Shown: positions 17,957-63,922 of the stretch, piece after piece
How the letters are laid out: each line of letters opens with the position of its first letter
How positions within the stretch are numbered: position 1 is the stretch's first letter
Virus record (IMG/VR): IMGVR_UViG_3300027573_000779
Location: 144,934-208,933 of that record
DNA length: 64,000 bases
Direction: 5' to 3' (one strand)
Translations under genes and position numbers: made by a program
The notes under the pieces: model-generated
Told to the model about the DNA's origin: nothing
The model's input: the letters and a program-made list of their open reading frames with translations, nothing else
The model's database searches: none

Positions 17957-18124
17957 AGCCAATTTATTTGATAGACCTATATAACCCTTCAAAAGGGCCG
18001 GTTGGCGGCACTATCTTTTTAACGACTTTTAGCTACGCCGTATGAATTAGCCAACCCTATCACTTGAAAAGCTTAACAGATTTTTTCCAAAAAGCAACAA
18101 TAAAGCCCTTCGGCGTCTGAGAAT

Positions 18125-18520
18125 TTAAGCTGCAACGGGTTCTGCCACTTCAGTTACAGGAATATTTTCTGTAACGTGCTCAGTCGCAGGCTGTTCGGGA
18201 GCATTGCTCACTCCTGACTTTTCAGCCGCTCGCGCCACCTTTTTGGCCAGTTTTTCAGCCTCTTTAGCCGCCTCTTCCTTGTGTTTATTTTCCCAATAAG
18301 CCTTTTTCGAAGCTGAGATTTTGTCCCTTCCAGCTTGGCTCATCTTACTTCCCTTGGGTCGCCCCTTTCGAGTTTGAGAAGGAGAAGGAAGAAGGCTAGG
18401 AAGAGTTGAGGGAATATTAATTCCACTCATCAACTGATTGTATTCAGACTGCTTTACCGCAATCTCTTCCAGCAACTTTGCCGCTCGCAAGTGAGTTTCG
18501 GGCGTTAACACTATGTTCAT
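18125..18520 (-). CDS. Basic putative DNA-binding / nucleoid-like protein
   Basis: N-terminal coiled coil, AT-hook-like KGRPKGS, and a NUMOD3-like MSQAGRDKISASKKAYW helix. Confidence 0.5.
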   Translation of the reverse strand: MNIVLTPETHLRAAKLLEEIAVKQSEYNQLMSGINIPSTLPSLLPSPSQTRKGRPKGSKMSQAGRDKISASKKAYWENKHKEEAAKEAEKLAKKVARAAEKSGVSNAPEQPATEHVTENIPVTEVAEPVAA

Positions 18521-25065: not shown

Positions 25066-25620
25066 ATGCGCTCAAAAGCCGCGAGGCTTAGTAATTTTTT
25101 GGTTAACGCCGCAGGGCTTAATTGCCCTTAAAGCTATAGACAAGATACACTATCTTTTTAAACTGTCAACGCTCTATGAAAGGCTATGCTGTATATGAGC
25201 TAAGTATGAGGCTCTTTTAATCTTCTTCTCTGCTAGGTAAGCTGCCTTTCTCTCCCTTTTGTTTGGGAACAAAGAAAGCATAACGTCTTCGTGATTTGTG
25301 GAATTACCTAATGCGTAAAGAAGATTTTCGGTTTCAAATTGGGTTAATTGAAATGTAACTTTCATATTGAATGCAAACCTGTTTTCTCAAGCTCTTCAGG
25401 ACCAAAAGCAACATTTAACATATCAACCGTAACAGAATAGCAACCGTTTTCGGGTATTAGTCTATTTACAACCCCACATTGACCTTTCCATGCGCCAGTG
25501 AGGATTCTAACCCTGTCGCCAATATTAAAGGATTGCTGTTCTTCTTTTGAGTCTTTATTCATCTGTGGGGATTATACAAAATCTTTTTAAAATGTCAATG
25601 CTCCAAAGCCGCAGGGCTTT

Positions 25621-33290: not shown

Positions 33291-33547
33291 TCATATGCTC
33301 AAGCGCCGCAGGGCTTAGTTTATTCTAATTCCCACCATTCGGGGTCCACTTCTGCCAAAGCTTTACCTAAGTCACTAGGAAAAACAACGGCAATATCATA
33401 AACGGGATTTTCTTTACCTTCACTATCTGATTCTGTCAAACTCAAACCCCTATGATTCAGAGTTAGGTTAGAGACTTTCTTAAAAAATGTTTCTAATTTG
33501 GCTTTATCGTGTTCTTTCATATGCTCAAGCGCCGCAGGGCTTAGTTT
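33291..33547 (-). repeat. Perfect ~31-bp direct repeats (33291-33321, 33517-33547) containing the junction element and bracketing gene 33320..33520
   Basis: tcatatgctcaagcgccgcagggcttagttt occurs twice. Confidence 0.9.
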
Positions 33548-35132: not shown

Positions 35133-36128
35133 TTAATAGTCCTGATTTAAAATCTTGACCGACAGTGATTTACCAAGAATTGGGGAATATTTGGGCGTTA
35201 TTGGTCGCAAAACAATCCCCTCTGCCTTGCGCTCTTGTCCTGTAGATGTGAGATAAATAGCCTTGTTAGCTTCTTCCTGAAGCCGCGCCATGGTCCAAGT
35301 ATCATCAAATGTAAAAGGTTCACTAACAGGAATAACCACAGGAATTTGCAATTGGTTGCATAACTCATTTATTTCCTGCCAGTTATACCATTTGCCAGTA
35401 TCAAATTCTTTAACATTAAAGACAAACATCTGAAAACTGTTCAGGCCCAATGGGTTACCTTGAATTTTGCCCCCGCAAGCCTCTGCTTGAATAGCAATGT
35501 TTTTACCCAACTCTTTAAGCTTAGAAGTTAGATTATATTGGTCTGCAATCTTCCAAAAGCCGGTCCCTTCTTTTTGCTCCAGCCGCCGACTGCAAACGCG
35601 AACTTCACCGTTTTCATAAATCACAGTCATTGAAGAACCGTCAGCTTTGATAGTTAAATAACAAAGTTCATTCCTAAACTCTTCTAAAATCTCTGGATAG
35701 TTTTGAATGTTTTCTTCGTCTGTAATTGAGATTAAATGAGTAGGAAAAGAACCCTTGGCGTCTCCATTAACAGAAGAATCAATAGGTTTGTCGTATTTTA
35801 AAATACCTAAAGCTTCCGAAACGTCCGAACCTTCTTCAACCTGATAGTTATAGCTTGGAATGATAGTTAAAGGGCAAACTAAACCCTGAGAAGGAGAGCC
35901 GCGAAACTTGGCGTTCCAGACACGATATTTTTGCCTTTCTAAAAAACTAAAATAAGAATTCGCGCTAGGAACAATAGAGTCAATACGAATAAACACCACT
36001 AAATCGCCGTTTTTATATTCTCCCTTCTTAACCACAACAGGCCATTCTTTAATTTTGGCGACTTCAAGAGAGTCGGCGTTGAAATGTGGTTGGACGCTAT
36101 GAATTCGTTCAATTGTGGCTAATTTCAT
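35133..36128 (-). CDS. ATP-dependent RNA ligase (Rnl2/DRB0094-like)
   Basis: N-terminal LATIERI...HFNADSLE; TDEENIQN; motif I KADGSS; CSRR; QAE..G..IQGN; EGIV; KILN. Confidence 0.92.
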   Translation of the reverse strand: MKLATIERIHSVQPHFNADSLEVAKIKEWPVVVKKGEYKNGDLVVFIRIDSIVPSANSYFSFLERQKYRVWNAKFRGSPSQGLVCPLTIIPSYNYQVEEGSDVSEALGILKYDKPIDSSVNGDAKGSFPTHLISITDEENIQNYPEILEEFRNELCYLTIKADGSSMTVIYENGEVRVCSRRLEQKEGTGFWKIADQYNLTSKLKELGKNIAIQAEACGGKIQGNPLGLNSFQMFVFNVKEFDTGKWYNWQEINELCNQLQIPVVIPVSEPFTFDDTWTMARLQEEANKAIYLTSTGQERKAEGIVLRPITPKYSPILGKSLSVKILNQDY

Positions 36129-36138
36129 TTTAAAAGGT

Positions 36139-36174
36139 ACCCACTAGCGAACTGGCTAGTGGGTGGTTTTTTTT
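36139..36174. terminator. Strong hairpin / terminator
   Basis: ACCCACTAGC-N6-GCTAGTGGGT followed by a T-run on +. Confidence 0.55.
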
Positions 36175-37018
36175 ACCTTTACTTAACAAGCCTGCAAACC
36201 AACAAACAGGTTAATTTGCAGCGTCTTCCCCGAAGACATTTTAATGATATCAAGCCTTTCTAAAAAGTCAATCTCTCAAGTGCCGAGGGGCTAAGTTTTC
36301 GCTAAGTGCGCCGCAAGGCTAATCTTTTTGGTGAACTTTAAATGCTAGTATCTTAGTGGGGTTTGGACAACGCCAACCGTCAGTAATACACTCATATCCA
36401 AGAGTCCTCAGAACTGTTCTAAAAGTATTTGTTTCACTTAATGATAGTTCTACCGCATCGCCCACATTCATTGTGTTCGCTAAAGTAATGAGATTCTTTA
36501 AGGTTTGTTCTCTTGAACCCCTTCCTTTAGGAATGGGTAAATTTTTATGTATCGTAAAACTTTTAACCATTCGTTTTATGGTAAAGGTAACATTTTACTT
36601 GGGATTAGCCTAAATCTATCTTTTTTGTTTTTGCTTTGAATATATCTTTTAATATCATCGTGTCTTCCATAAATACCCCTTTCAGAGTATTGATAAGGCT
36701 CCCATGCACCGTATCCATCCCAATCGGTACAAAACTCAATTACTATCTGAAAAACGGGCGCTTTTAAGTGAACCCATTTTCCTAGCTTAGAATCATAAAC
36801 ATGTACTCCAGCATTATCATAATATTTTTTGCGCTCTATTTCTTTATAGGTTGTGCCGCCTTTATTGCCACATTTCGGACAATATTCCCAAGGGTCTTCA
36901 ATATTTAAAGTAAACTGTTTATGGCAGCTTAAGCATTTAAAACGAGCATAATGGCCATCTCCATGGTCTTCTTGCCATTTGGGACTAATTTGTAATAAAG
37001 TTCTCATACAGGGCTATT

Positions 37019-37243
37019 TTATTTTTGGTCCCAAACTTGGTCCTCAACTTGGTCCCAAACTTGGCCCTGAACTTGGTCCCAAACTTGGTCCCGAACTTGG
37101 TCCCGAACTTGGTCCCGAACTTGGTCCCGAACTTGGTCCCGAACTTGGTCCCAAACTTGGTCCCAAACTTGGTCCCAAACTTGGTCCCGAACTTGGTCCC
37201 GAACTTGGTCCCAAACTTGGTCCTCAACTTGACCCTCAATCAT
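37019..37243 (-). CDS. Archetypal QVWD-repeat protein, 17 x (Q-V-[WRE]-D)
   Basis: MIEG(QVxD)17QK; same frame and strand as all diverged paralogs. Confidence 0.8.
37025..37233. repeat. 12-bp tandem array, 17 copies (+ strand AACTTGGTCCC[A/G])
   Basis: Direct reading. Confidence 0.97.
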
Positions 37244-37256
37244 AAAGATTTAGTTT

Positions 37257-37382
37257 TTAATTCCTCAACTTGCCAATAAACTTGGTCTTTAATTTGTTAC
37301 CATTAACTTGGTTCCAAACTTGGTCCCCAACTTGGTTCCGAACTTGGCCCCAAACTTGGCCCCAAACTTGGTCCGCGTTCAT
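37257..37382 (-). pseudogene. Frameshifted QVWD-repeat gene (not in track)
   Basis: MNADQVWGQVWGQVRNQVGDQVWNQV, then a frame change; QIKDQVYWQVEE continues in another frame. Confidence 0.6.
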
Positions 37383-37389
37383 AAAAGAA

Positions 37390-37411
37390 GGGTAGCCCCG
37401 CAAGGCTACCC
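37390..37411 (-). terminator. Hairpin/terminator after DUF932 gene
   Basis: GGGTAGCC-N6-GGCTACCC. Confidence 0.6.
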
Positions 37412-37420
37412 CAAATTAAC

Positions 37421-38425
37421 CTAATTTTTTGGCAAGGTTAAGTCCTGTAGGAGTAAATCAGTAGCCCTCTGTTTGAGATTAGCTCCAGTACCAAGTAGCG
37501 CCGATTCAAACTTTGCTTCCTGTCTATTAGCTCCTTCTTCTGCTCTGGTGCTTCTTTTTTGGTCAACAAATTCAGTTATACTGTTTAGGTAATCATACCT
37601 TGTCTCGCCTACATTCCCTGTGCCACGCTGAAAAAGTTCTGTTACCTGCTCTCGAATATTCTCAGTTCTTGAGCTACATTCATAAAGTCCAGTTTCCTTA
37701 TTCAATTTCCCCGGAAACAAGGTTTCATTGTACCTAACTACCTCTTCTTCATTGCATTTCTGGTCTTTGAGCATTTTCAAGACTAGCTCCAGCCGCCCAA
37801 AATAACCATAAGCAATTCCGAGCGCCCTTTGAACTTCCTCTTTGTGACTCTTAAAACTTTTGGTATGGCGCATCTTAACCTGATTCTTTGCGCCTTTTAG
37901 GGCTGCATTAAGGGTGTTTTGACAGACTACCCGCACCGCTACATTCTGCATCCATACTGAGTGCGTACCATCGTGGCTTGAAATCATCAAAATCCACTTG
38001 TCCATCTTATCGCTAGGGTCAATATACATGGTTTCTGGCAGCTTGGCCATAATCCAGATTTTGCGCCCCTCTCTTAAAGACCCCGCAGTCTCATAAACTG
38101 CCTGACCTTCAGAAATAACCGAATCAAAAAATTCAAAAGCTTCCTCGTTTTGGACTGGCGTATATCGATTACCTACCACTCCCAGTTTAACCCCATTGTC
38201 CTCCCTTACAACAGCTTTATAATCTTCAAATTCAGAAAGACCACTCTCTGTCTGAATAAAAATTGGCTCTTTGCGAACCCTCCAATCCAAATGCGCCAAT
38301 TGGATTGCTTCTTTGGCTGTAACTGTTCCTTTGACAACGCTTCCCAATGAATGCCAAGGAACTATATTATTACCGCTAAAAGTTTCCGCAGTGCCGTCTT
38401 CTCTAATTGTTATTTCGTGTGACAT
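37421..38425 (-). CDS. DUF932 family phage/plasmid protein
   Basis: PWHSLG, LDW.V, Y.PVQN.EAF.FF, ETAGSL..G..IW, SHDG, RVVCQNTL, RHT. Confidence 0.9.
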   Translation of the reverse strand: MSHEITIREDGTAETFSGNNIVPWHSLGSVVKGTVTAKEAIQLAHLDWRVRKEPIFIQTESGLSEFEDYKAVVREDNGVKLGVVGNRYTPVQNEEAFEFFDSVISEGQAVYETAGSLREGRKIWIMAKLPETMYIDPSDKMDKWILMISSHDGTHSVWMQNVAVRVVCQNTLNAALKGAKNQVKMRHTKSFKSHKEEVQRALGIAYGYFGRLELVLKMLKDQKCNEEEVVRYNETLFPGKLNKETGLYECSSRTENIREQVTELFQRGTGNVGETRYDYLNSITEFVDQKRSTRAEEGANRQEAKFESALLGTGANLKQRATDLLLQDLTLPKN

Positions 38426-38913
38426 ATTGTTTTACAAGTTTGTTTATCTGTCTACAGCATAACAAATCTTTTTAAACCGTCAACAGGTTTCTTTTGAAAG
38501 TCTCCCCACTGCTTTTTCAAGTGCAACCATCTTAACCTCAAGTGGTTGCCCAGTCAAAAAAGCAACCAAAAGAGATTGAGACAAATCTTCTATTATCACA
38601 TCAGCCTCTTTTGGAGGAGTAGTACGAGTTTGTGTCCTAATTTTAGACAGGCAGTTCTTCATTGTTTCTTTATAAAAATTACGCTCTCTTCAAGCCCGAA
38701 AGCCCAAAGAAAATTATTCCAACCTCTGTGTCCTAGTCCGCGCATTTTCCAGACTATTCTTTTAGTATCATGAGCATTTTTGATTAACCAGTCTTGTTTT
38801 TGTTCTCTAGACCAGTTAACGTTGTATATTTCATCCACAGGAAAGAATCTTGTGTTGTCAGCTAAAAAATCTTCAATTTCTGGTAAATTTGGCATTGCTC
38901 AAGCGCCGCAAGG

Positions 38914-39102
38914 CTAGTTTATTTTTAGGTCTCTAACTTGGTCCCAAATTTGTCCCACAACTTGGCTTCTAAATTGGTCCTGTATTTGGCTTTGGCCCCA
39001 AATTTGTTTCTTGGTTTCATGCCCAACTTGGTCCCAAATTTCGCTCCAAATTTGGTCCCAAACTTGGTCCCGAACTTGTCTTTTTATTAAATTACTATTC
39101 AT
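38914..39102 (-). CDS. QVWD-repeat mini-protein
   Basis: [20 protein letters not shown]. Confidence 0.8.
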   Translation of the reverse strand: MNSNLIKRQVRDQVWDQIWSEIWDQVGHETKKQIWGQSQIQDQFRSQVVGQIWDQVRDLKIN

Positions 39103-39395
39103 TCAAATAATCATCGGGATTAACTTCTTCGCCAACATCGTCTTCTTCAGTTAAAGGAGAACCACAAATAGCACAAATTTCTTCTAAAAGCGAATAGCTG
39201 CTATGCGCTCCGCCATCTCCCTCTTGAACCAATACTTCAACCAGTTTATAGACGCGCCAATTGACTAACTCTGCTAATACTGGCAAGTCTTCCTTGGTAG
39301 GAGGCCAACAAGAGGCGCAAAGGTCTAAATGTTGGTCGTTAAGTCTTATTCTAGGCATCTCTCAAGCGCCGAGGGGCTAAGTTTTCGCCGCAGGG

Positions 39396-40764
39396 CTAGT
39401 TTATTTTTATGTTCCAAATGTGTTCCACAACTTGGCCTTCTACTTCTTCCCCAACTTCTTCCCAAACTTGGCCCCAAACTTGTTCAAAAACCTGTTCCCA
39501 AACTTGACCTTCTACTTGGTCCCAAATTTGTTCCCCAATATGGTTATGAACTTGGCTCCTAATTTGGTCATCAATTTGCTTCCTAATGTTATCTTTCGTC
39601 ATTAACGCGCCGATTTAAATTCTGGTATTTCCATCCAATGCGCCCGAACTGAAGGTAAAGCTATTGTACTCGTATAAGTTAAATCATTGTCCGTCATAAC
39701 AATAATTTTTGTGCCTTGCTGCTCCCATCTTCCAGTAATTTGCTGCCATCCCTCTTTCCGTTTAAGAGACCAAAGAACGGTGGTTTTTTGTGGAGGTTTC
39801 TCTTTCTCGAAATTCTTCCAAATCATAAAAACGATGATAATAAAAGTTTTTAAAATGTCAATGCTCAAGCGCCGCAGGGCTTAAGCCCTTTTTTTAAAAC
39901 GCCGAGGGGCTAAGCGCCATAGGGGGTTCTGTGTTCCAAGCTTGGTGCCAAATTTGGTTTTCTACTTGGCTCCCAATCTGTTCCCAAACTTGGTCCCAAA
40001 TCTGTTCCCAAACTTGGCCCCAAACTTGGCCTTCTATTTGGTTCCAAATTTGGTCCCCAATATGGTGGTCCCCAATATGGTCCCTAACTTGGTCCATAAC
40101 TTGGTTCTGAATGTTGTCTCTTGTCATGTTCTTAAGGAGGGCTAGGTTTCACTAAAACATTTATTTGAAATTTGTATCATAACTTCATGCCGTAATTGGT
40201 TCCAGTGTTCCTGACCTTGGTAAACTTGGTCCCCAACTTGGTTCCAAACTGCTTGGTTCCCAACTAGGTTTTGAATACTCTTAAAAGTTTGCCCCAAAAC
40301 GCCATTATATAACTGATGATGTAACTGATTCTCAATCTTATTTCTAGTCATGTGTCTCTAAAACTTGGTCCCCAACTTGGGTCCTAACTTGGTTCCGAAT
40401 TTCTTCTAAAGATGGATGTAAAAAACGTCGCCCCCAAAGTAACGGGTGCGAAGTCGGGTCTTGGATTTGATTATAAATTTGCTTCAAAATTTGGTCCCAA
40501 GTTTGGCCCCAAACTTTTGCGAACACCTGACTCTTAATCTCATCTTTGGTCATGTTTTTAGTAAATTTTGCTGCACCGAAAAACTTGGTACAAAATTTCA
40601 TTTTTAATTTCATACCTTATTTGTGGGTCCCAATAATCCTGAATTTGGTTATGAACCTGCTTGCTAATTTGGTTGCCAGCTTGGTTGAACAACGGTCTTA
40701 CAACAAGTTCCGAAGTTTGACCCCGAACAAAAGCATCCTGATTCTCAATCTTATCTTGGGTCAT
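39396..40764 (-). CDS. Cluster of five QVWD-repeat paralogs (40558..40764, 40344..~40553, 40142..40351, 39894..40127, 39396..39602) interrupted by one unrelated ORF
   Basis: Shared N-termini MTQDKIENQ, MTKDEIKSQ, MTRNKIENQ, MTRDNIQNQ, MTKDNIRKQ. Confidence 0.8.
39861..39918 (-). repeat. Stacked junction elements fused to a promoter -35 box; block duplicated at 44097-44167
   Basis: taaaatgtcaatgctc..gccgcagggcttaa..cttttttt..aaacgccg.aggggcta at both sites. Confidence 0.8.
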
Positions 40765-41488
40765 ATTTTATTAAAAAAGGTAAATACAATTTAATACAAA
40801 TCTCAGTAGCCACTTTTTCATCAAAACAATATGTAATCGTTCGTTTTTCAAAAGCTTTGTCTAATTCTTTTTCAGCTTCATCTACTTGTTTGTTTAAATC
40901 TTCTTTTTTGTAATTAGCTGGATTAGTTTTAATATCTATTAACCGCGCCGCAAAATCAGGGTTATATTTTTTGACATTAACGGGAAAAATCCCGTCAGTA
41001 AAAAAATACTTACCAGCCCAAGCAAGCCTAAATAATTGCACCGCATTCTTAAAAGAATAGCCAAACTCTTCTACCGCCTTGTGCCGCTTTGAACCTAAAA
41101 GCCCAGTCCGCTCGCCGTTCATCAATCTTCTTTCCCCAAACATGTAGCCTTTTAAAGATTTATATAAATGTTTACTATCAAGCAAAGAAAATTTATGAGT
41201 AAGGATTAACGCCCATTCTGGAGAGGGTTTAAAATTCGGCGCTTCATCTGTAAAAAGCAATTCTAAAGCCTGAGTGTTAGTCTTTCTTAAGCTGGATAAA
41301 AAATGTCGAAGCTCAAAAAGAAAAGTATCATCATTTTCTTTTTTAATATCCTGATGGTCGAACCTTTGGAGACCAATAATCTTTTCGGGTTCTTCGTTTA
41401 AAAAACAACCCCTAGCGTCCAAGTCGGACGCTGGAGTATTTAAACCGTAAGCATGACTTCCACCAAGAGTTGAGTAAATAATCTTCAT
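40751..41488 (-). CDS. DNA-pol-beta superfamily nucleotidyltransferase (RlaP/YcgL-like)
   Basis: GGSHAYGLNTPASDLDARG, NTQALELLF. Confidence 0.88.
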   Translation of the reverse strand: MKIIYSTLGGSHAYGLNTPASDLDARGCFLNEEPEKIIGLQRFDHQDIKKENDDTFLFELRHFLSSLRKTNTQALELLFTDEAPNFKPSPEWALILTHKFSLLDSKHLYKSLKGYMFGERRLMNGERTGLLGSKRHKAVEEFGYSFKNAVQLFRLAWAGKYFFTDGIFPVNVKKYNPDFAARLIDIKTNPANYKKEDLNKQVDEAEKELDKAFEKRTITYCFDEKVATEICIKLYLPFLIKYDPR

Positions 41489-41769
41489 TTTGCTTCAATC
41501 TCACAGCACCAAGTTTCAAGAGCATCAAGGTTTTCTCCCTTGTAAATTTCTTCCAGTTTATCGAATTCGTTCCTCAACGCCGAATGTAAAATGTCCCCAA
41601 GTTGACCCCAACCTATATCGTCACAGTCTAAAGAGTGTTTGGCATAAGCGCAAAGACAAGCGTGAAGCAACCTGTCGTTTCGCCCATTATGTTCATTTAG
41701 TTTATGGTAATCGGGCTTTATAAGAGCTTGAATTCCCGTCAATAAATCTTTGTTAATTGGTTCCATAAA

Positions 41770-42738
41770 TTATTTAGACAACAGCCTAGGATAGGTTTCT
41801 TTAATTCTATCTAAAATCAGCCGCCCGTTTTCTGTAATTATACGCCCATTTGCCTTCTCAATTTTCATCAAATCGTTCTTTAAGAGATAAATTTCAGCGT
41901 CTCTTTGGACCGCTGTCATGGTCTGTCCCGTCTTAGCCGCCAAAGTGGTTAAAGAAACTCCTGTGCCAGCCTCTAAAATACCCAAAATCTTAACCTCAGA
42001 AGGAAGAAGCCCCAAAGGAAGAATAAACAGTTGCGTCTTAATCTCGTTCCATTCCTTCAAAGATAGAATCCTTCTGTCGTGACTATCCATATAAAGCTTG
42101 ATAGACATAGCTATCTGGAAAGACTGCCGCGCATTACCACGAAAACAATCAGAAATATCTTCTAATGCCTCATCGTGAATTTGATTGGGCGTTATATACT
42201 TGAGAAGTATTTTACCAAGTTGCTCCCGAGTATAGCCTTCTAAATCAACTCGTTCCAGCCTGTTAAGGAAAGCCGCAAAAAGCTTTTGAGGTTCAGATGT
42301 GGCAAATATCCATGTAATCTTCCTCAAGTCAAAAACGTAGTCTTTCCCATTAAACAACAACCTATTTTTATGTTCCTTATTGGGGTTAAGAATAGTCAAC
42401 AACTCTTCCCTCATCATGTCTTTTGGGAGTTCTGCTGCTTCGTCAAAAAATAAGGTGACTTCGTTTTCTATTTTTGGCTGCAAAATTTGAGTCATTAACT
42501 GAAAGAAACTTTTAACACCCCCACAATTAATTATCGTTAGAGGTTTAATTTTGGTAGGGTTACTGGGTGTAATCAATTTACTGCTGAAACTTTCCGACAA
42601 GACTGTCTTGCCATCGCCCTTTGGACCAGTAAATAGAAGAGGGGGAATTATACCACTTCTATAATAGTTTTTTAAAAAGAAGCCAAGTTTTAGCTTGGCT
42701 CCTTCCTGTCCTATAATGTTATCAAACGAAACACTCAT
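41770..42738 (-). CDS. ruvB: RuvB-like AAA+ ATPase
   Basis: FDNIIGQE, GPKGDGKT, FFDEA, ATS, RGNAR, and C-terminal wHTH LTTLAA...EIYLL...GRIIT. Confidence 0.8.
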   Translation of the reverse strand: MSVSFDNIIGQEGAKLKLGFFLKNYYRSGIIPPLLFTGPKGDGKTVLSESFSSKLITPSNPTKIKPLTIINCGGVKSFFQLMTQILQPKIENEVTLFFDEAAELPKDMMREELLTILNPNKEHKNRLLFNGKDYVFDLRKITWIFATSEPQKLFAAFLNRLERVDLEGYTREQLGKILLKYITPNQIHDEALEDISDCFRGNARQSFQIAMSIKLYMDSHDRRILSLKEWNEIKTQLFILPLGLLPSEVKILGILEAGTGVSLTTLAAKTGQTMTAVQRDAEIYLLKNDLMKIEKANGRIITENGRLILDRIKETYPRLLSK

Positions 42739-43176
42739 TCTTTCTTCTCATTCTTTCTCGAAATGAATCTCTGTAGTTTCCAATGGAATATGCGTTATTA
42801 ATGTTTCAAGCTTGGCTGTTATTGGGGTGCCTTTAAGTTTGTTCTGGTCTGCCCATTTGCGCCACACCGGAATTGGATAGTCGGGCTTAAACAGTTTGTT
42901 CAATTCAGACAAAGGCACTTCACAGCAACTCACCGCTCCTGTTTTGCGTCCACTGCCTTCTTTTCTAGGTTTTTTTTCTATCATACATTAATAAAAACAA
43001 TTTCTAAAAGCGTTTCTTTCACAATCCCGCTACGCAAATCAGATTGCGGCCAAAACATTGCATCCATTTGACTTCTAAAACGGTTGTTAACTTGCGCACT
43101 AATTTTGTCAAGAATAAACCATTCAGTTTTTTGAATTTCTACTCCGACGCTGTTGTGAACGCTGTTTTCTACTTTA

Positions 43177-44082
43177 TTAAGCCGCACTGACAAATCGTCC
43201 ATTTTCATCGCGCTTATTGTAATAAGTCACCTTAACCTTACCAAGCTTGTTTTTTTCGCTTGCAAACCTGCCAAAGGAGTCGCGCTTAGGGTTGAAAGCT
43301 TTAAGCCTGTTCCCTGTCACTTTACCAGAATACAGCCTTTCTGTCAAGATGTTGCCATTTTCCCATTTTCCAACCACCGAAACAGGAAGATATCTCCAAG
43401 CTCTGCCTTTGGACTTATTTAAATCTTGCGGGATTGCAACAACATCCATTGGATTAACTTTGACAACAACAACTTTAGTTTTGTTGTTTATAATACCCCC
43501 ATAATAAGGCAAATAGGAATAAGAACAAAAATGTAGCCCATTTGAACAAAGCCTGATTCTGCTTGGGTCTACTTCATTGGGGTCCATTTTGACAATCTTG
43601 CCAATAGCATGTTTCAAATGAGTGCCATCAGGAGACTTGTTATAGGAAGTCATGTCTTCTCTCAGCATCTTATAAGCAAGAAAACACCCGTCATCAGTAA
43701 TAGGCATCTCTCCATTTTCAAGAAAATCGTACAGTTCGTTTCGTGCATCTTCTGAAGGATTTTTATAGAGATTAGCCAAAAACCTCACATAAGGTTCATA
43801 AGGGAAACCTCCTTGGACAAACTGTAAAATGCGCTTAACCAAGGTCCCATGAATTTCCTGTCCGTCATAATAAATCGCGCCGCTGTGGACTTTCACTTTG
43901 CCGTAGCTATGCTTTAGGATAGCGCCGGGAAGGTCCATTGCTTCAATCAGCTTCTTGTAATTCTTCTGTCTGTAAAACTCAAGAGCCTTTTGCCAATTTG
44001 GGTGGGTTGAATTGATGGAGTGCCGTTTACCATCTACCACCACAACCAGCACGTTGCCGTTAAAAATTGCTGAAACGTTCAT
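43177..44082 (-). CDS. rIIB: rIIB-like protein
   Basis: FLANL..NPS...ELYDFL...PITDDGCFLAYK...CSNGLHFCS..Y...VKVNP.DVV.IP.D...K.R. Confidence 0.9.
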   Translation of the reverse strand: MNVSAIFNGNVLVVVVDGKRHSINSTHPNWQKALEFYRQKNYKKLIEAMDLPGAILKHSYGKVKVHSGAIYYDGQEIHGTLVKRILQFVQGGFPYEPYVRFLANLYKNPSEDARNELYDFLENGEMPITDDGCFLAYKMLREDMTSYNKSPDGTHLKHAIGKIVKMDPNEVDPSRIRLCSNGLHFCSYSYLPYYGGIINNKTKVVVVKVNPMDVVAIPQDLNKSKGRAWRYLPVSVVGKWENGNILTERLYSGKVTGNRLKAFNPKRDSFGRFASEKNKLGKVKVTYYNKRDENGRFVSAA

Positions 44083-44164
44083 ATTTTTAATTGTATTAAA
44101 AATTTTTAAAATGTCAATGCTCCAAAGCCGCAGGGCTTAACCTTTTTTTAAAACGCCGGAGGGG

Positions 44165-44564
44165 CTAAAAAATGTCAAAAGTTTGGTCCCAAATACGGTC
44201 CAAAACTTGGTCTGCAACTTCATCTCTAAATTCACTAATGTCCCAAATTATAAGCGCAATCTGGCCCTTCACACTCCCCTCAACTTGGTCCGCTATTTGT
44301 CTTACGAGTGTGTCTTTAATTTTTTGGACCTTGTTATTTACTCTCATAAAAAATCTGGTTCCAATGGTTTAGAAGGTATTCCCAAATTGGGTCTGCAACA
44401 TCCTCAATCGTAAGTGCAATACTGTCTCTTTGGTCCCAAATCAGGTCTCTTACTGACTGCCCAACGTGGCTTACAATTTGGTCAACAAGGTGGTCGTCAG
44501 ATTCATGAATTCGATTTCTAATTTGATAAAGAGTTTCGCTCTCAATTTTGGTTAAATATATCAT
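44165..44564 (-). CDS. Two QVWD-family mini-proteins inserted between rIIA and rIIB
   Basis: QIADQVEG...ADQVLDRIWDQ; VDQIVSHVGQSVRDLIWDQ. Confidence 0.7.
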
Positions 44565-46666
44565 TTTTCCCTTATATAAGCCAAAAGGTCTTTTTGAATG
44601 TCTTCTTCCTCTTTCTCAAAACCGTAACTTTCCATTGCGTGTTTGATATAAGAATACAAAGGATAGTGTTTTAAAACATCGCTCTTAAGGCTCGCAAAAT
44701 CAACACTGGGCGTTTTAGTGCTTTCAGTCGCAAGCATGAAACCTTTCTTTGCCGAATTAATTACATTAATAATAGCAAGTTTTTGGCGTGCCTTTTTGGA
44801 AGCAACCTCTAGCTTAATATAGGCTCTCAAAAGCTCCGCAAAGGGAGAATCTTTTTTCACGCCAGACCATTTATACTCGCCCAAATAACTTTCCTCTATG
44901 CTGTCAAAAGCCTCTTTGTCTGCAATAAGCTGAGAAAGGTCTTCTTTGGCTATAGTCGCCTCAACCGCTTGAATTAAGTAATCCTTAAGAGTAACCCATT
45001 CGCTCAAATCTTCTTTAGCCACCAAAGCTTTCTTAAAACCATAGACTACAGGAACAGGATAATTAAGAGAACGTAAGGTGTCTAAAACCGACTGAATAAA
45101 TTTTGACCGTTTTTTGTCGTTTTCTTCCCAACAAACTTCATACCTGTCAATTTCAACATAGACCCCGCCCTCTTCAAGGTCTACTTCTGCAATATCCCAA
45201 AAATCACTTTTAGCCCTGCCATCAGGATTAAATACAAAGACCTTTTTGGAATTCTTCTCATTATTACCATTATAGGTATTGGGGGGCACAGGAAGCTCTT
45301 TAACCGACTTAAGTTGGGGAACCAAGTCTTCAAGCCCCATCTCTTTAAGTAGTAGCTCCCGATATTCGGGCTTAGTTGCCACAATCATCCAAACATATTC
45401 ACAATAAGTTTCTTTAAAATGATAGGAAACCCTGCTCTTACACCTTGTTGCGTCTTTAATGTAGACTTGCAAGTCTTTCTTAAAAGGCAATCTGTCTACA
45501 ATCTCTAAAGATACCTTTTTGCGCCCGTTCCTATACCAACGCTCAATGAAAACATCATTGGGCTGTAGATTATTACGCTTATAAAAGTCTTCAGGAACCA
45601 TAAAGTTAGTCCCCTTGACAGACTGACCGCCAAACTGAAGGTCTAAACCCTCAATAATATAGCGCAAGTTGCTGCTATAAGCTCCATCTAGAAACAAATC
45701 AGCCCAAATTTCTCTGGCGTTCCAAAGAGTTCTGGCACTGGCAAATTTAGCCTTTACCGTCTCTTCAAATCCACCAATAATTTCTCGACATAAAAGCAAA
45801 ATAGCATTCTTGGTCTTATCTGTATATTGTAAACCTTCCCGATTAACCGCAATATCAAGGTCGCCAATATTAAAATGAAACACTAAACCAGACTGAAGAA
45901 GACGTTCTAGTTTAGCATCAAGACTGGTAAAAACACTGGCGCGAATGGGATATGCAACCTGCCCCATTACCGCATAAGAAGTGGTTTGATTCTTATACAT
46001 CACCCAATTCTTACCACTAAAAGCCTCTTCCAGTGGAATTTGGTTATAGTAACGATTCCCTATAATTTTTGGCGCAACCTTCCAAAACCTAAAAACATCC
46101 TGTGCTTTTAGTCGAAATTCTTCAAAATCAAATTCATTAACAGGGACAATAATTTCAATCCCATCTGGCTCTTCAGTGGGGCTTTTATCCATTTGGGCAA
46201 TACGCCCTTCCTGTGAAGGGTCAATGAAAGCAGTGTAAGTAGTCTTAACGCCTTCCTGATAACTTACAATAGAAAAACTGTCCCCGTAAGCAAAACCCGA
46301 CTTGGAACCAATCCCCAACATCCCAATAGTCGCATTGGAATTTCTTTTCGTTGATTTGCAATACTTTACATAGGTATTGGTTACATCTTCATCGCTGAGG
46401 CCAGTCCCAAAATCGCGCACTCGAAACTCTGGTTCCAAAACATTAGGCAAGTGAACTTGGATAGGAAGGTCCCCTTTTCCAGCCTCTACATTAGCGTCAT
46501 AAGCATTACAGCTATATTCCCTGATAACAGCCTTGGTCTTATCCTCATAAAGACTGTTCCGTAGAATATGAAAAAGCATTGAAAAGTCTTGGGCATCAAT
46601 CCCAAAACTATTCACTTTCAAATCACCTTCTGTTTCAAGAATCCGGCTCTGTTGTGTTAAAATCAT
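44561..46666 (-). CDS. rIIA: rIIA-like protein (GHKL ATPase)
   Basis: LY.DK..AVIREYSCNAYDA, RDFGTGLS, STKRNSN..IG.LGIGSKS.FAY. Confidence 0.92.
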   Translation of the reverse strand: MILTQQSRILETEGDLKVNSFGIDAQDFSMLFHILRNSLYEDKTKAVIREYSCNAYDANVEAGKGDLPIQVHLPNVLEPEFRVRDFGTGLSDEDVTNTYVKYCKSTKRNSNATIGMLGIGSKSGFAYGDSFSIVSYQEGVKTTYTAFIDPSQEGRIAQMDKSPTEEPDGIEIIVPVNEFDFEEFRLKAQDVFRFWKVAPKIIGNRYYNQIPLEEAFSGKNWVMYKNQTTSYAVMGQVAYPIRASVFTSLDAKLERLLQSGLVFHFNIGDLDIAVNREGLQYTDKTKNAILLLCREIIGGFEETVKAKFASARTLWNAREIWADLFLDGAYSSNLRYIIEGLDLQFGGQSVKGTNFMVPEDFYKRNNLQPNDVFIERWYRNGRKKVSLEIVDRLPFKKDLQVYIKDATRCKSRVSYHFKETYCEYVWMIVATKPEYRELLLKEMGLEDLVPQLKSVKELPVPPNTYNGNNEKNSKKVFVFNPDGRAKSDFWDIAEVDLEEGGVYVEIDRYEVCWEENDKKRSKFIQSVLDTLRSLNYPVPVVYGFKKALVAKEDLSEWVTLKDYLIQAVEATIAKEDLSQLIADKEAFDSIEESYLGEYKWSGVKKDSPFAELLRAYIKLEVASKKARQKLAIINVINSAKKGFMLATESTKTPSVDFASLKSDVLKHYPLYSYIKHAMESYGFEKEEEDIQKDLLAYIREK

Positions 46667-48897: not shown

Positions 48898-49499
48898 TCA
48901 ACAGTTTAGAAATTTTGAGCTTTCGTCCCAAATTTGTTCTGAAATTTGTTCCCAAGCGTCTTCAAGTCGAAAAAACTTCTCGTTCGCTATAATTTGGCTC
49001 CGAATTTGGAGATGAACTTGGTTATAAATTTCTCCTCCAATCAAACTCCGAAGTTCTATAATTTTAGTCGTCATCTGGTTCAAACGGTTCATATATTCAA
49101 GCGCCGAGAGACTATGTTGTTTTTGTGTTCATAACCGCAACTTGTTCCAAAATTGGGTTCCAAATTTGGTCCCTAAATTGGTCCCGCATTGGAGTCCAAA
49201 CTTGGTACCTAAATTGGTTCTTAATTTGGTCCCCAACTTGGTTATTAATTTTATCCCAAATTTGGTCCCCCATAATCTGAATTTTAGTATTAGCCATAAC
49301 TCTGGTTTCTTTACTAAGGGCTTAGTGTCTCCCTAAAAACTTGGTTCCAAAGCTGGTCCTCAATTTGGTGCTTGATTCGGTTTTCTATTGTGTCAATAAC
49401 TTTCCCAACTTGGTCCCAAACTTGGCTCCTAGCTTGATTCCAAAAAGCATGAGATATAATCATAGTTCTGGTTTCTTTACTAAAGTCATGCGCCGCCAT
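48898..49499 (-). CDS. Three tandem QVWD-family mini-proteins upstream of DUF6745
   Basis: GDQIWDKINNQVGDQ; WNQARSQVWDQVG; WEQISEQIWDE. Confidence 0.75.
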
Positions 49500-50467
49500 A
49501 TTAATTTGCGCAGTTTTCCTTCAGGACCATGGGGTTGATGGACGAGGCTTTTTCTTCGCCAATGCATCCGTGGAGAAGCGTGATGTCCCCCTAGACTTGG
49601 TGACTCGTGTTCAATCTTATAACCATATCCAACAATATTAGGAGACCAAAGCGCTTCTTTTTTAATTTCTCCCGTCTTAGCCTTTTTCTCGGGTCTTTCT
49701 AAAGATGCTGGCTTAATAAGTTTTGGACTGGTCCCCCAAACCATTAAAGTAAGGATTGTGGCTTGAACGGCCTTAATTAGGATTTTCTGTTCTTCTTCAG
49801 ATGAAGGAGATGGGGATTTGTCGTTTTTAATTTTTTCATATAGTTTTGGTTGGTAGAGTTCATACATTAATTCTTGAACCTTTGTCACATCTTCCCACCT
49901 ACCTTCTTTTTCAGTTAGACCAACAGTACTAATTGGCATATTAGTTGGATACCACGCGGCATAATTAACAAAACGCCCGCTATCCATTAAAAAAGGTAAA
50001 TGAAAACACAAAGTTCCCACATTTACTTCTTGTCCCAAAACAAAATCTCCTTTATCTACAAGTGAAACGCCAATAAAGGGAAATCGCCAGCCTAAATAAG
50101 ATTCAACAAATTGTGTTGGAAACACTAATATAAAATGTTTTAAAGGCAGATAAACTTCGCTAAAACTAAAATCTTGAGGAGGGACAGTCGCCACACATTC
50201 CAACAGAAATTCATGGTCAATAAAATAAGTCGGAACCTGAGTGTCTATCAAATTGTTGGTAACCGTTTTAATTACTTGGTCTGTGTCTCCTTGCAAAGAA
50301 TAAAACCATGAATTAATAATGCCTAAAACAAGACTGTAATATTTTGGGTCATAATACCCATTAGGGCAGACAATTCGTTTCGGGTAAAACAAACTAATTC
50401 TTTCTTGCGCCTTTTCGCAAAGTTCTTTGAAATGGTCCCACTCGTTTTCAAAAATTTCAATCTTCAT
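49460..50467 (-). CDS. Hypothetical phage protein with C-terminal SPRxHWRR motif
   Basis: GGHHASPRMHWRRKSLVHQPHGP...RKLIW. Confidence 0.6.
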   Translation of the reverse strand: MKIEIFENEWDHFKELCEKAQERISLFYPKRIVCPNGYYDPKYYSLVLGIINSWFYSLQGDTDQVIKTVTNNLIDTQVPTYFIDHEFLLECVATVPPQDFSFSEVYLPLKHFILVFPTQFVESYLGWRFPFIGVSLVDKGDFVLGQEVNVGTLCFHLPFLMDSGRFVNYAAWYPTNMPISTVGLTEKEGRWEDVTKVQELMYELYQPKLYEKIKNDKSPSPSSEEEQKILIKAVQATILTLMVWGTSPKLIKPASLERPEKKAKTGEIKKEALWSPNIVGYGYKIEHESPSLGGHHASPRMHWRRKSLVHQPHGPEGKLRKLIWRRMTLVKKPEL

Positions 50468-50504: not shown

Positions 50505-51143
50505 TTATTTTTGCTTCAAAATGAAGCTTAACCACTCTACCCTTGGGACAGTTGAAATTTCGCTTGCCGCAGTCCTAGGTAAAGGTTTTTTAGGCTCATA
50601 AAGAAGTCTGTGTCTGAAATTTTCGATAGGCATATTCCCTCTTTCACTGTTTAAGTCCCTATGGGCCAAAACAATATTGGTCCACTCGTCCTTTCCACCA
50701 TGGGATTTGGGTTTAACGTGTTCTAAAGAAGCTTCAGCTAAAGTTAAGATTTTACCACTATAAGCACATTTCTTGCCATAATGACGATAAGCGTTACGTT
50801 TGTTTAGTTTTAACTCCCTGAGGGCTAGACCGTTATAGTTTTTTGCCCTCATCACAATCGGCGCTCTAATAGTTCTTTTAGAGGTATGAATTGGAATGTC
50901 CCATGAACGAACCGGTAAATTCATCCAAGCTTCTAAATTAACTGGTTCCCAATAGCTAACTTTATCGAAATTCGGTCTGCCATCATCATCTAATTCAAAT
51001 TCAATATCAATCCCTTGAGAGGCCATATTGCCATCTTCTGAAGTAGAAAAAAGATTGGTAAGAGCCTTCTTTATTGTCGCGGTGCCTACAACAATATAAA
51101 GACTATTAAGAACAAGAACAAGCTGTTCATTTAAAAGGTTCAC
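50505..51143 (-). CDS. HNH endonuclease
   Basis: VLVLN, CAYSG, SLEHVKPKSHGG...WTNIV.....N..RGN. Confidence 0.88.
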   Translation of the reverse strand: MNLLNEQLVLVLNSLYIVVGTATIKKALTNLFSTSEDGNMASQGIDIEFELDDDGRPNFDKVSYWEPVNLEAWMNLPVRSWDIPIHTSKRTIRAPIVMRAKNYNGLALRELKLNKRNAYRHYGKKCAYSGKILTLAEASLEHVKPKSHGGKDEWTNIVLAHRDLNSERGNMPIENFRHRLLYEPKKPLPRTAASEISTVPRVEWLSFILKQK

Positions 51144-52655: not shown

Positions 52656-53078
52656 TTACACCCAAACACTTTCTACGGGAACGGTACTATCAGAAATCCC
52701 TTCCTGTTTTAAATATTCTCTAATATTCTTCGAGCCTTCCGGGTTGTGACTGTGAACGTAAATTTCTGGAAGTGGCACTTTTGTCTTTCTACAATAACGA
52801 ACCAACCATCTGGCGCAATCAAACCCCGTTAACTCAGTAATCTTGGTATAGTCTATAGGTTTCTTGTGTATTTGCGCAATTTCCCATTCCATAATTGCAG
52901 ACCAATCTAAATCATGGTCTAAACTTACTACTTTAGGAATGCCATTTCTAAGTATAAAATCAATAAAATCCTTACCATTTCGCAAAACGACCCAAGGAAC
53001 AGTTTTTAAATGTTCGGGATATGCAATCCAATAAACCGCCTCAATACCAGAACGTTCATCGTCTAAAAACAAATACAT
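52656..53078 (-). CDS. Cyclic-phosphate-processing receiver-domain protein
   Basis: LFLDDER, VSLDHDL, TGFDCARWL, VHSHNPEG..NI. Confidence 0.88.
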   Translation of the reverse strand: MYLFLDDERSGIEAVYWIAYPEHLKTVPWVVLRNGKDFIDFILRNGIPKVVSLDHDLDWSAIMEWEIAQIHKKPIDYTKITELTGFDCARWLVRYCRKTKVPLPEIYVHSHNPEGSKNIREYLKQEGISDSTVPVESVWV

Positions 53079-61719: not shown

Positions 61720-61899
61720 TTAGTAAATAACCCTGTTTCTTCCGCCGCCGCCGAATGTCACTACGTATTCTACAAAATTTTTCCCATAGATTCCCCTAAT
61801 TTCGTGTCGTATTTTTGGCTTTTGTTTTTTAAATTGCATTTTTAAATTTGGAAACAATAAAAACGCCGTTAATCCAGTAAAGAAATTACGCCTGTTCAT
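61720..61899 (-). CDS. 59-aa ORF with twin-arginine N-terminus (not in track)
   Basis: MNRRNFFTGLTAFLLFP...; fills the gap between neighbours exactly. Confidence 0.55.
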   Translation of the reverse strand: MNRRNFFTGLTAFLLFPNLKMQFKKQKPKIRHEIRGIYGKNFVEYVVTFGGGGRNRVIY

Positions 61900-63845: not shown

Positions 63846-63922
63846 TGGTTGCGGGAGAAGGATTTGAACCTCCGTCCTCTTGGTTATGAGCCAAGCGAGC
63901 TACCAGACTGCTCCATCCCGCG
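63846..63922 (-). tRNA. Initiator tRNA-fMet (CAT), CCA encoded
   Basis: CGCGGGATGGAGCAGTCTGGTAGCTCGCTTGGCTCATAACCAAGAGGACGGAGGTTCAAATCCTTCTCCCGCAACCA; C1:A72 mismatch, A11-U24, TTCAAAT loop. Confidence 0.96.

What the first reader, a model, noticed from the sequence alone, without database searches (positions are those of the whole stretch)
36271..44167. Stacked 'empty' junction elements and duplicated junction-promoter blocks
Two or three partial elements are stacked without an intervening gene at 25066-25120, 36271-36320, 39357-39398, 39861-39928 and 44117-44167. The block 39841-39912 is nearly repeated at 44097-44167, and 36272-36301 at 39358-39387. Inference: scars of cassette loss, or of recombination between distant junctions, which favours a DNA-level mechanism.
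Basis: partly seen in the sequence, partly recalled or inferred. Interest (0 to 1): 0.65.

Follow-up and report, generated by a model that had tools for sequence, protein, structure and literature searches.

The report
Stacked gene-boundary elements in jumbo phage
In the early-gene region of a 209-kb environmental phage, a 22-base GC-rich signal that marks gene boundaries sometimes sits as a cut-off copy next to a whole copy; these pile-ups are real and look like footprints of gene shuffling, and the whole copies carry compensating base changes that point to a small folded RNA.

Summary
All five stacks exist at the stated coordinates, and both near-repeats are real: 29 of 30 bases identical, and about 90% identity over 76 bases with a third copy at genome position 24.0 kb.

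The window is the end of a 208,933-bp phage record that encodes rIIA and rIIB. Its minus strand is a dense array of tiny orphan genes. The genes are separated either by sigma70-type promoters placed for leaderless mRNAs or by a 21-24-nt GC element, TAA/TAG-GCC-N4-GGCGCTTGA-GNN. That element is followed at a fixed distance by ATG or by a -35 box.

In about 20 complete copies, the last three loop bases covary with the GNN tail in six Watson-Crick combinations. This supports a crossing helix (a pseudoknot) and so an RNA-level constraint. Each stack is a truncated copy, cut after GGCG and lacking the tail, followed by an A/T linker and a complete copy.

Two relatives (rIIB 51-56% identical) have only a promoter between rIIA and rIIB. 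The 44.1-kb stack therefore lies in an inserted block, not a deletion scar. The phage has no integrase or resolvase but does have a RecA/UvsX-like gene.

Best reading: junction shuffling like the PeSL cassettes of T4-type phages, which leaves truncated elements behind. No site-specific cassette system is indicated.

The parts
25107..25119 (-). Truncated element (stem-1 hairpin only, ends after GGCG). It lies downstream of a promoter.
25066..25089 (-). Complete element with loop UCGC and tail GCG. ATG follows at 25065.
36309..36321 (-). Truncated element. Its TAG is the stop codon of the 83-aa gene 36319-36570. It is followed by the chimeric piece CACTTAGCG (36300-36308).
36272..36293 (-). Complete element (loop CCUC, tail GAG) abutting the -35 hexamer TTGACT at 36266-36271.
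39386..39398 (-). Truncated element. Its TAG is the stop codon of the xDQV-repeat ORF 39396-39602.
39359..39379 (-). Complete element (CCUC / GAG). ATG of the 87-aa gene follows at 39358. This is a synteny breakpoint relative to relative L012.
39900..39928 (-). A degenerate piece (39913-39928) fused at CTT|AGCC to a truncated element (39900-39912). Both lie inside the 3' end of the xDQV ORF 39894-40127.
39834..39882 (-). Complete element (39862-39882; CUGC / GCA) followed by a sigma70-type promoter: -35 at 39856-39861, -10 at 39834-39839. ATG is at 39826.
44154..44167 (-). Truncated element with a 5-nt loop. Its TAG is the stop codon of the xDQV ORF 44165-44347.
44090..44138 (-). Complete element (44118-44138; perfect 5-bp stem, CUGC / GCA) followed by the rIIB promoter: -35 at 44112-44117, -10 at 44090-44095. 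ATG is at 44082.
44083..44560 (-). Block absent from two relatives, where rIIA is followed by a promoter and then rIIB. It holds two xDQV ORFs (44334-44564 and 44165-44347) plus the stacked elements.
33295..33546 (-). 66-aa gene (33320-33520) flanked by two complete elements that form 30-nt perfect direct repeats. It is an element-bounded cassette whose homologue in L012 sits elsewhere and has no elements.
38896..38916 (-). Solo complete element after the paralogous xDQV ORF 38914-39102. It has the same 3' end as the ORF at 39396-39602 and shows the unstacked state.
18103..18125 (+). The only inverted complete copy. Loop UUC pairs with tail GAA, a sixth complementary combination.

Best explanation
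The window is the hyperplastic early region of a 209-kb rIIA/rIIB-encoding phage.

Shown:
- Gene boundaries carry one of two compact modules. One is a strongly conserved sigma70-type promoter whose -10 hexamer ends 6-9 nt before the ATG. The other is a 21-24-nt GC element.
- The GC element starts with a stop codon, forms the small hairpin GCC-N4-GGC, and ends with ...CTTGA-GNN.
- The element is followed at +21 to +24 by ATG or by the -35 box.

Inferred from covariation: in the transcript, the last three loop bases pair with GNN. This gives a small H-type pseudoknot that acts as a boundary signal for the upstream cistron. Its role could be insulation, 3'-end or processing control, or translational coupling. 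The exact role is unknown.

Inferred for the stacks: they arise when DNA rearrangement puts a gene that carries the 5' part of an element next to a resident junction. This could happen by homology-driven exchange through the phage's RecA/UvsX-type machinery. It could also happen by unequal exchange at the CTT|A(A)GCC quasi-repeat shared by the element's tail and its 5' flank. The truncated copy keeps the stop codon and hairpin but loses the tail, so it cannot form the second helix. It is a relic, or at most a plain hairpin.

One such composite (truncated copy, T4A7 linker, complete copy, promoter) then spread as a unit to three loci. One of these is the insertion between rIIA and rIIB.
For: - Anatomy and coordinates.
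- Covariation in helix 2: 92.8% of cells are paired. Pair 10-24 is UA 13, CG 7, UG 1. Pair 11-23 is GC 12, UA 7, AU 2. The covariation score is 0.370 against 0.187 +/- 0.028 in shuffles (0 of 500 reach it), and slid controls reach at most 0.162.
- Six of ten distinct loop/tail haplotypes are perfectly complementary. A haplotype-level permutation gives P = 5e-4.
- A compensatory change (UAC / GUA) lies inside the thrice-copied composite.
- All six truncated copies end at GGCG.
- The composite block is present at three loci, and the downstream genes are unrelated.
- Relatives L012 and L013 have rIIA, a promoter, then rIIB. They have no GC element and no xDQV ORFs.
- Homologues of five small genes lie in a different order in L012.
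- A RecA/UvsX-like gene is present, and no integrase or resolvase is found.
- PeSL precedent: PMC2839356 and PMC4122927.
Against: - No polymorphism or junction variant was seen in four other assemblies or three sequencing runs. All are about 100% identical, and the apparent joints are only other repeat copies.
- No relative carries the element, so no filled or empty pair was observed.
- Helix 2 is only 3 bp, and helix 1 is nearly invariant and therefore untested.
- Predicted hairpins are weak, at -2.6 to -8 kcal/mol, and are no better than shuffled sequences.
- The subfamilies are related by descent, which inflates shuffle-based significance.
- The composite keeps its hairpin and its T4A7-8 linker in all three copies. 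That could instead mean the stack itself is under selection.
- No RNA data exist.
Confidence: 0.5

Rival explanations
1. The stacks are selected composite signals, not scars. A first hairpin followed by U4, and a second hairpin that on the opposite strand is followed by U7-8, would form a two-way terminator or insulator in front of an early promoter. This is the terminator-plus-promoter logic of PeSLs.
For: - The same architecture occurs at three loci. The hairpin potential and the T4A7-8 tract are kept despite indels in the loop.
- The plus-strand scan flags hairpin-plus-T-run sites at 39876-39889 and 44125-44138.
- Antisense hairpins fold at -7 to -8.2 kcal/mol.
Against: - Sense-strand hairpins of the truncated copies fold at only -2.6 to -5.4 kcal/mol, no better than shuffles, and are followed by only four U.
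- The two AAAACT-type stacks and the stack at 25066-25120 have no U tract.
- The count of terminator-like sites in the region is not above that in shuffles.
- Three copies related by duplication do not demonstrate selection.
Confidence: 0.2
2. The element is a DNA-level recombination site of an integron-like cassette system. It would be folded as single-stranded DNA and cut at a fixed point, and the stacks would be empty cassettes.
For: - The array is one-directional and the small genes lack promoters.
- All truncated copies share the same breakpoint after GGCG.
- Structure rather than sequence is conserved in part of the element.
- The gene at 33320-33520 is bounded by identical elements.
Against: - The complete genome has no tyrosine or serine recombinase, and the controls for those searches were positive.
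- The element is 21-24 nt long, against 55-141 bp for attC sites.
- The two helices cross, which is not an attC-type hairpin.
- The A-type and tail-type are tightly linked, so the halves do not reassort.
- The relatives shuffle the same genes without any such element.
Confidence: 0.06
3. The element is a binding site on DNA or RNA for a phage or host protein, such as an operator or a translational repressor of a regulon. Stacks would be tandem sites.
For: - Strong sequence conservation of AAGCC and GGCGCTTGA, with a fixed distance to the ATG or the -35 box.
- The same conserved bases recur three times in an unrelated 65%-GC phage contig, twice 73 nt apart in an intergenic region.
- Resemblance to the start-associated sequences of Cluster K mycobacteriophages.
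Against: - Covarying positions change identity freely as long as they stay complementary. This is not expected for base-specific contacts on double-stranded DNA.
- The truncated copies lack half of the conserved bases.
- No candidate binding protein was identified.
Confidence: 0.12
4. The stacks are an assembly artefact or a chance resemblance.
For: De Bruijn unitigs break at the repeats at 39382 and at 44109-44138.
Against: - Identical sequence occurs in five assemblies and in runs from three studies. Single contigs bridge 39095-39415, 39382-40229 and 38400-44132.
- The motif count is 19 against 0.46 expected.
Confidence: 0.01

Closest known systems
PeSL (promoter-early stem-loop) cassettes of T4-type phages (Arbiol et al. 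2010, PMC2839356; Comeau et al. 2014, PMC4122927)
   Same: - Short repeated junction motifs that combine a GC-rich stem-loop with a consensus sigma70 early promoter.
- They are concentrated in hyperplastic regions full of orphan genes.
- Indels relative to related phages are bounded by them.
- Exchange depends on the phage's general recombination system, not on an integrase.
   Different: - Here the GC part is a 21-24-nt unit that more often stands alone, directly between a stop codon and an ATG.
- It has no U tract and only a weak hairpin.
- It shows covariation for a second, crossing helix.
- PeSL stem-loops are proven terminators. This was not shown here.
- The phage is not demonstrably T4-type.
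- No mini-circles or chimeric junctions were observed.
Start-associated sequences (SAS and ESAS) of Cluster K mycobacteriophages (Pope et al. 2011, PMC3203893)
   Same: - A short repeat in one orientation, in the non-structural half of the genome.
- It lies a few bases upstream of start codons.
- It sometimes contains the stop codon of the upstream gene.
- It sits in front of genes from unrelated families.
- Its function is unknown.
   Different: - SAS contains the Shine-Dalgarno core AGGAG. The element here has no such core.
- Seven copies here precede a -35 box rather than a start codon.
- SAS shows no reported loop/tail covariation.
Integron attC sites and gene cassettes
   Same: One-directional array of small, mostly promoterless genes separated by a structured repeat.
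   Different: - No integrase is present.
- The element is several times shorter than an attC site.
- The helices cross.
- The host is a lytic-type phage genome.
Small H-type mRNA pseudoknots in phage translational control, such as the T4 gene 32 leader (from my own knowledge, not checked here)
   Same: A compact two-helix fold close to a translation start in an early phage mRNA.
   Different: - Those are single-copy operators bound by a known protein.
- Here about 20 copies punctuate a gene array, and no partner is known.
- No Rfam family matches, even at E-values up to 5.

Membership tests
PeSL (T4-type promoter-early stem-loop) | The motif contains a consensus sigma70-type early promoter. 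| tested here: met
   Seven complete elements abut TTGACA/TTGACT with a 16-nt spacer and a TAnnnT -10 hexamer. Twelve others abut an ATG with no promoter.
PeSL (T4-type promoter-early stem-loop) | An adjacent stable stem-loop that terminates transcription. | tested here: inconclusive
   Hairpins fold at -2.6 to -8.2 kcal/mol, no better than shuffles, and there is no sense-strand U tract except U4 after three truncated copies. Function was not assayed.
PeSL (T4-type promoter-early stem-loop) | Located in hyperplastic regions, flanking orphan genes. | tested here: met
   The neighbouring genes have no Pfam or PHROG family. Gene order is shuffled relative to L012.
PeSL (T4-type promoter-early stem-loop) | Indels between related phages are bounded by the motifs, and chimeric motifs or mini-circles occur. 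| tested here: inconclusive
   The rIIA|rIIB insertion ends at the stacked element plus promoter. However, the relatives lack the GC element, no close relative exists, and no circles or variants appear in the reads.
PeSL (T4-type promoter-early stem-loop) | The host genome is a T4-type myovirus. | tested here: inconclusive
   rIIA, rIIB and a RecA/UvsX-like gene are present. The Gp23 family was not found, but the control for that search rang nowhere.
Integron cassette / attC | An IntI-type tyrosine recombinase is encoded. | tested here: not met
   PF00589 and PF00239 are both absent from the complete 208,933-bp record, and the controls were positive.
Integron cassette / attC | A 55-141-bp imperfect palindrome with R''/L''/L'/R' boxes. 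| tested here: not met
   The element is 21-24 nt long and its two short helices cross.
Intrinsic (rho-independent) terminator | A GC-rich hairpin followed by a U tract on the transcribed strand. | tested here: not met
   Complete copies are followed by CTTGAG..., not by U. The scan finds none of them on the minus strand.
H-type RNA pseudoknot | Two helices in crossing order, each supported by covariation. | tested here: inconclusive
   Helix 2 is supported by six complementary combinations (0 of 500 shuffles; haplotype P = 5e-4). Helix 1 hardly varies, and no structure probing was done.
Start-associated sequence (Cluster K) | Contains the Shine-Dalgarno core and lies 3-7 bp before start codons only. 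| tested here: not met
   There is no AGGAG core, the gap to the ATG is 0-5 nt, and seven copies precede a -35 box.

The most novel reading that the evidence does not exclude
The GC element may be an undescribed 22-nt pseudoknot that acts as a 'punctuation mark' in a phage whose early genes are otherwise made as leaderless mRNAs. It contains the stop codon of the upstream gene and ends 0-5 nt before the next AUG. It could direct cleavage or protection of the transcript so that genes without a promoter also obtain a 5'-terminal AUG. This would be analogous to tRNA punctuation of mitochondrial transcripts. The stacked truncated copies would then record how such marks spread with orphan genes.
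Probability: 0.12. Interest if true: 0.8.

Novelty: new variant of a known kind. Interest (0 to 1): 0.55.

Why it matters
How large phages gain, lose and reshuffle orphan genes is known in mechanistic detail only for T4-type PeSLs. This is an environmental jumbo phage outside the sequenced T4 group. Its gene boundaries are built from two tiny modules, and truncated modules mark where junctions were joined. One of these is a dated insertion between rIIA and rIIB.

The compensatory changes also define a new candidate RNA motif. It has about 20 copies in one genome, sits exactly between stop and start codons, and occurs in a genome with leaderless-type promoters. This gives a directly testable system for boundary signalling in polycistronic phage mRNAs.

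Tried and rejected
- Close relatives. Megablast against GenBank phages found nothing. A single-protein scan of IMG/VR found nothing. An exact 18-mer scan gave 3 loci, and a degenerate scan with 15 specified bases gave 109 loci, which is about the number chance would give. Only one unrelated 65%-GC contig had several copies, and the loop/tail pairing is not kept there.
- Population variants. Four further assemblies are 99.9-100% identical. Contigs from three runs showed no indel. The listed 'joints' have short sides (22-49 nt) and lead to other repeat copies in the same genome, not to rearranged molecules. No RNA run exists.
- Known RNA families. The elements match no Rfam family at the gathering threshold or at E-values up to 5.
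- Stable secondary structure. Folding z-scores are about 0.
- Promoter for a phage RNA polymerase. No single-subunit or multisubunit polymerase was found (the control for rang nowhere). The element is too short to hold -35 and -10 boxes, and there is no conserved -10 inside the downstream genes (inspection).
- Shine-Dalgarno role. There is only a GAG, 0-5 nt from the ATG, and most genes in the region have no SD at all.
- Proteins next to the motif in the unrelated contig. They have no Pfam family and no homology to this phage.
- An analogous junction element in relative L012. Only the leaderless promoter is repeated there.
Full report
**Where the window lies.** The window is bases 144,934-208,933 of a 208,933-bp IMG/VR virus record that CheckV rates as complete. 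From about 10 kb onward nearly all genes are on the minus strand, and most encode 50-130 aa. Recognisable genes in the window:
- rIIA (44561-46666) and rIIB (43177-44082);
- an RNA ligase (35133-36128);
- DUF932, RlaP, DUF6745 and an AAA/RuvB-like ATPase.

The genome also encodes a RecA/UvsX-like protein and a sigma70-region-2 protein. No phage RNA polymerase, tyrosine recombinase or serine recombinase was detected. The DNA comes from groundwater and freshwater-sediment metagenomes.

**The observation.** All five stacks are present at the stated coordinates. The core motif occurs 19 times against 0.46 expected. Read on the coding strand, each stack has three pieces:
- a truncated copy of 13-14 nt, consisting of a stop codon and a small hairpin and ending after GGCG;
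- an A/T-rich linker: AAAACT, 17 nt at 25090-25106, or T4A7 plus a few bases;
- a complete copy of 21-24 nt.

ATG or a -35 hexamer follows directly. At 39913-39928 a third, degenerate piece is fused to the truncated copy at CTT|AGCC. At 36300-36308 there is a chimeric piece.

Both claimed near-repeats are real:
- 36272-36301 and 39358-39387 agree at 29 of 30 bases.
- 39841-39912 and 44097-44167 are about 90% identical (E 1e-22). A third copy lies at genome position 24046-24107.

The five stacks therefore reduce to at most three independent events: one composite family of three copies, one AAAACT-type family of two copies, and the single stack at 25066-25120.

**Anatomy of the junctions.** Two modules separate the genes.
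- The first is a highly conserved sigma70-type promoter. At about 33 sites its -10 hexamer ends 6-9 nt before the ATG. This geometry predicts leaderless or nearly leaderless mRNAs.
- The second is the GC element. I found 19 well-formed complete copies on the coding strand (18 in the window and one at genome position 24.06 kb), plus one inverted copy at 18103-18125. There are also three degenerate copies, six truncated 5' halves (five in the window) and one 3'-half-only fragment.

The element begins with TAA or TAG. In solo copies and first-in-stack copies this is usually the stop codon of the upstream ORF. The ATG lies at +21 to +24 from the element's start, or the -35 box at +21 or +22.

**Evidence for a folded RNA.** In an ungapped alignment of 23 copies, the last three bases of the 4-nt hairpin loop are complementary to the three bases that follow ...CTTGA. 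Six combinations occur: UGC/GCA, CUC/GAG, CAC/GUG, CGC/GCG, UAC/GUA and UUC/GAA. There is also one wobble case. The three mismatched cases lie in copies whose hairpin is also degenerate.

The counting tool gives these figures (one search is similar):
- 92.8% of cells in this helix are paired;
- pair 10-24 is UA 13, CG 7, UG 1;
- pair 11-23 is GC 12, UA 7, AU 2;
- the covariation score is 0.370 against 0.187 +/- 0.028 in shuffles (0 of 500 reach it), and at most 0.162 when the partner is slid.

A permutation that counts each distinct loop/tail haplotype once gives P = 5e-4. This helix crosses the GCC/GGC hairpin, so together they form an H-type pseudoknot.

Caveats:
- The helix is only 3 bp.
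- Helix 1 hardly varies.
- Thermodynamic folding of the hairpin alone is unremarkable.
- I found the pairing by inspection before testing it.

The UAC/GUA change lies inside the thrice-copied composite, next to a promoter rather than a start codon. The constraint is therefore not specific to translation starts. It fits better with a role at the end of the upstream cistron.

**What the truncated copies are.** All six end at the same point, after GGCG, and so lack the tail that pairs with the loop. Three of them supply the stop codon of an xDQV-repeat ORF: 39396-39602, 44165-44347, and, in another frame, 39894-40127.

A paralogous xDQV ORF (38914-39102) has the same 3' end but is followed by a normal complete element and an ATG. 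This shows the unstacked state.

The 5' flank of many elements (CTTAAGCC or CTTAGCC) resembles the tail (CTTGAGCA). Three fusion points lie exactly there: GGCGCTT|AGCCCC, GGCGCACTT|AGCG and GGGCTT|AAGCCC. This suggests unequal exchange or slippage between tail and flank (inference).

Exchange between two complete elements would leave one element. An example is the pair of 30-nt perfect repeats around gene 33320-33520. This is what was reported for PeSL mini-circles. Stacks are therefore not the expected scar of a simple cassette loss.

**Comparison with relatives.** Across 5.8 billion proteins, the nearest rIIB homologues after the phage itself are 56%, 51% and 48% identical.

The 51% relative (L012, a 202.7-kb contig) and the 56% relative (L013) have rIIA followed by a 22-37-nt leaderless-type promoter and then rIIB. 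In the window the same promoter precedes rIIB. About 480 bp lie between it and rIIA: two xDQV ORFs, the truncated element and the complete element. By parsimony this is an insertion.

L012 and L013 have no GC element and no xDQV ORFs in 26 kb. The only repeated junction motif in L012 is the promoter.

Homologues of five small window genes occur in L012 in a different order. In particular, the 87-aa gene downstream of the stack at 39357-39398 follows the DUF6745 block in L012, so this stack is a synteny breakpoint. The 66-aa gene flanked by two elements in the window is coupled to other neighbours in L012 and has no elements.

**Population data.** Four other assemblies (two of about 208.8 kb) and contigs from three studies are 99.9-100% identical across all four stacks in the 36-44 kb region. 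Single contigs bridge the stacks. The reported joints are short matches to other repeat copies. No RNA run is available.

**Comparison with known systems.** The closest system is the PeSL of T4-type phages. It is a GC-rich stem-loop plus a consensus early promoter, clustered in hyperplastic regions and mediating insertion, deletion and replacement of orphan genes by homologous exchange. This case differs in four ways:
- the GC module is self-standing and more often abuts an ATG;
- it is not a canonical terminator;
- it shows a second, crossing helix;
- the phage is not demonstrably T4-type (inconclusive).

The Cluster K start-associated sequences share the position before start codons but contain a Shine-Dalgarno core. 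An integron-like reading fails on the integrase and on attC size and form. No Rfam family matches.

**Verdict.** No site-specific system is indicated, and the element itself appears to be constrained as RNA. I classify it as a new variant of the PeSL kind, with a candidate new RNA motif. The main rival is that the composite stack is itself a selected two-way terminator/insulator.

Noticed in passing
window 21925-56632, minus strand; e.g. 37019-37243, 39396-39602, 39894-40127, 44165-44347: A family of at least 12 small ORFs built from a 12-nt repeat that encodes xDQV/xDQI tetrapeptide repeats. It includes a near-perfect tandem array at 37019-37243. The family is absent from relatives L012 and L013 and has no Pfam or PHROG match. 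These ORFs are often appended to the preceding gene by overlapping stop and start codons, and they are usually followed by a GC element.
   Followed up: partly
window 13400-60900, minus strand; also L012 and L013: At about 33 sigma70-like promoter sites the -10 hexamer ends 6-9 nt before the ATG. This implies leaderless or near-leaderless early mRNAs. The design is shared by the 51% and 56% relatives, including the promoter in front of rIIB.
   Followed up: partly
window 36138-36165 and 37389-37412: Strong hairpin-plus-T-run terminators lie only a few bases before the ATG of the next gene (the RNA ligase gene 35133-36128, and the ORF at 37257-37382). The loop region of the hairpin at 37389-37412 resembles the GC element (TAGCCTTGCGG).
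   Followed up: no
window 33295-33546: The 66-aa gene 33320-33520 is flanked by 30-nt perfect direct repeats of the complete element. Its homologue in L012 (4458-4658) has other neighbours and no elements.
   Followed up: partly
window 18103-18125 (+): This is the only inverted complete copy of the element. It lies just past the stop of gene 18125-18520, in a 403-nt gap, and has a unique complementary loop/tail pair (UUC / GAA).
   Followed up: partly
window 16275-16290 and 20692-20743: At about 16275-16290 there is a 3'-half-only fragment (GGCGCTTGAGTG). Its TGA is the stop codon of gene 16290-16514, and a promoter follows it. At 20692-20743 the tail-like CTTGAGAG serves as the -35 box of a promoter. 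The tail therefore resembles a -35 hexamer.
   Followed up: no
L011 1421-1512 and L028 596-614 (IMG/VR contig 3300020577_013934, 77.6 kb, 65% GC): An unrelated high-GC viral contig has three copies of the same conserved bases, AAGCC-N4-GGCGCTTGAG. Two lie 73 nt apart in an intergenic region and one in a probable coding region. There is no protein homology to this phage, and the loop/tail pairing is not kept. This is unexplained.
   Followed up: partly
window 49460-50467, 50505-51143, 52656-53078: Precomputed Pfam hits on neighbouring genes: AcrVA2-like (335 aa), a faint HNH hit (212 aa) and cREC_REC (140 aa). These are possible anti-defence or homing functions within the same orphan-gene region.
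   Followed up: no
genome 142911-143051 (about 1.9 kb before the window) and 61582-62280: A phage-encoded sigma70-region-2 protein lies in a 233-aa open frame. A RecA/UvsX-like recombinase lies in a 372-aa open frame.
   Followed up: no
window 63846-63922 (-): A single tRNA-Met (CAU) gene lies at the end of the window.
   Followed up: no
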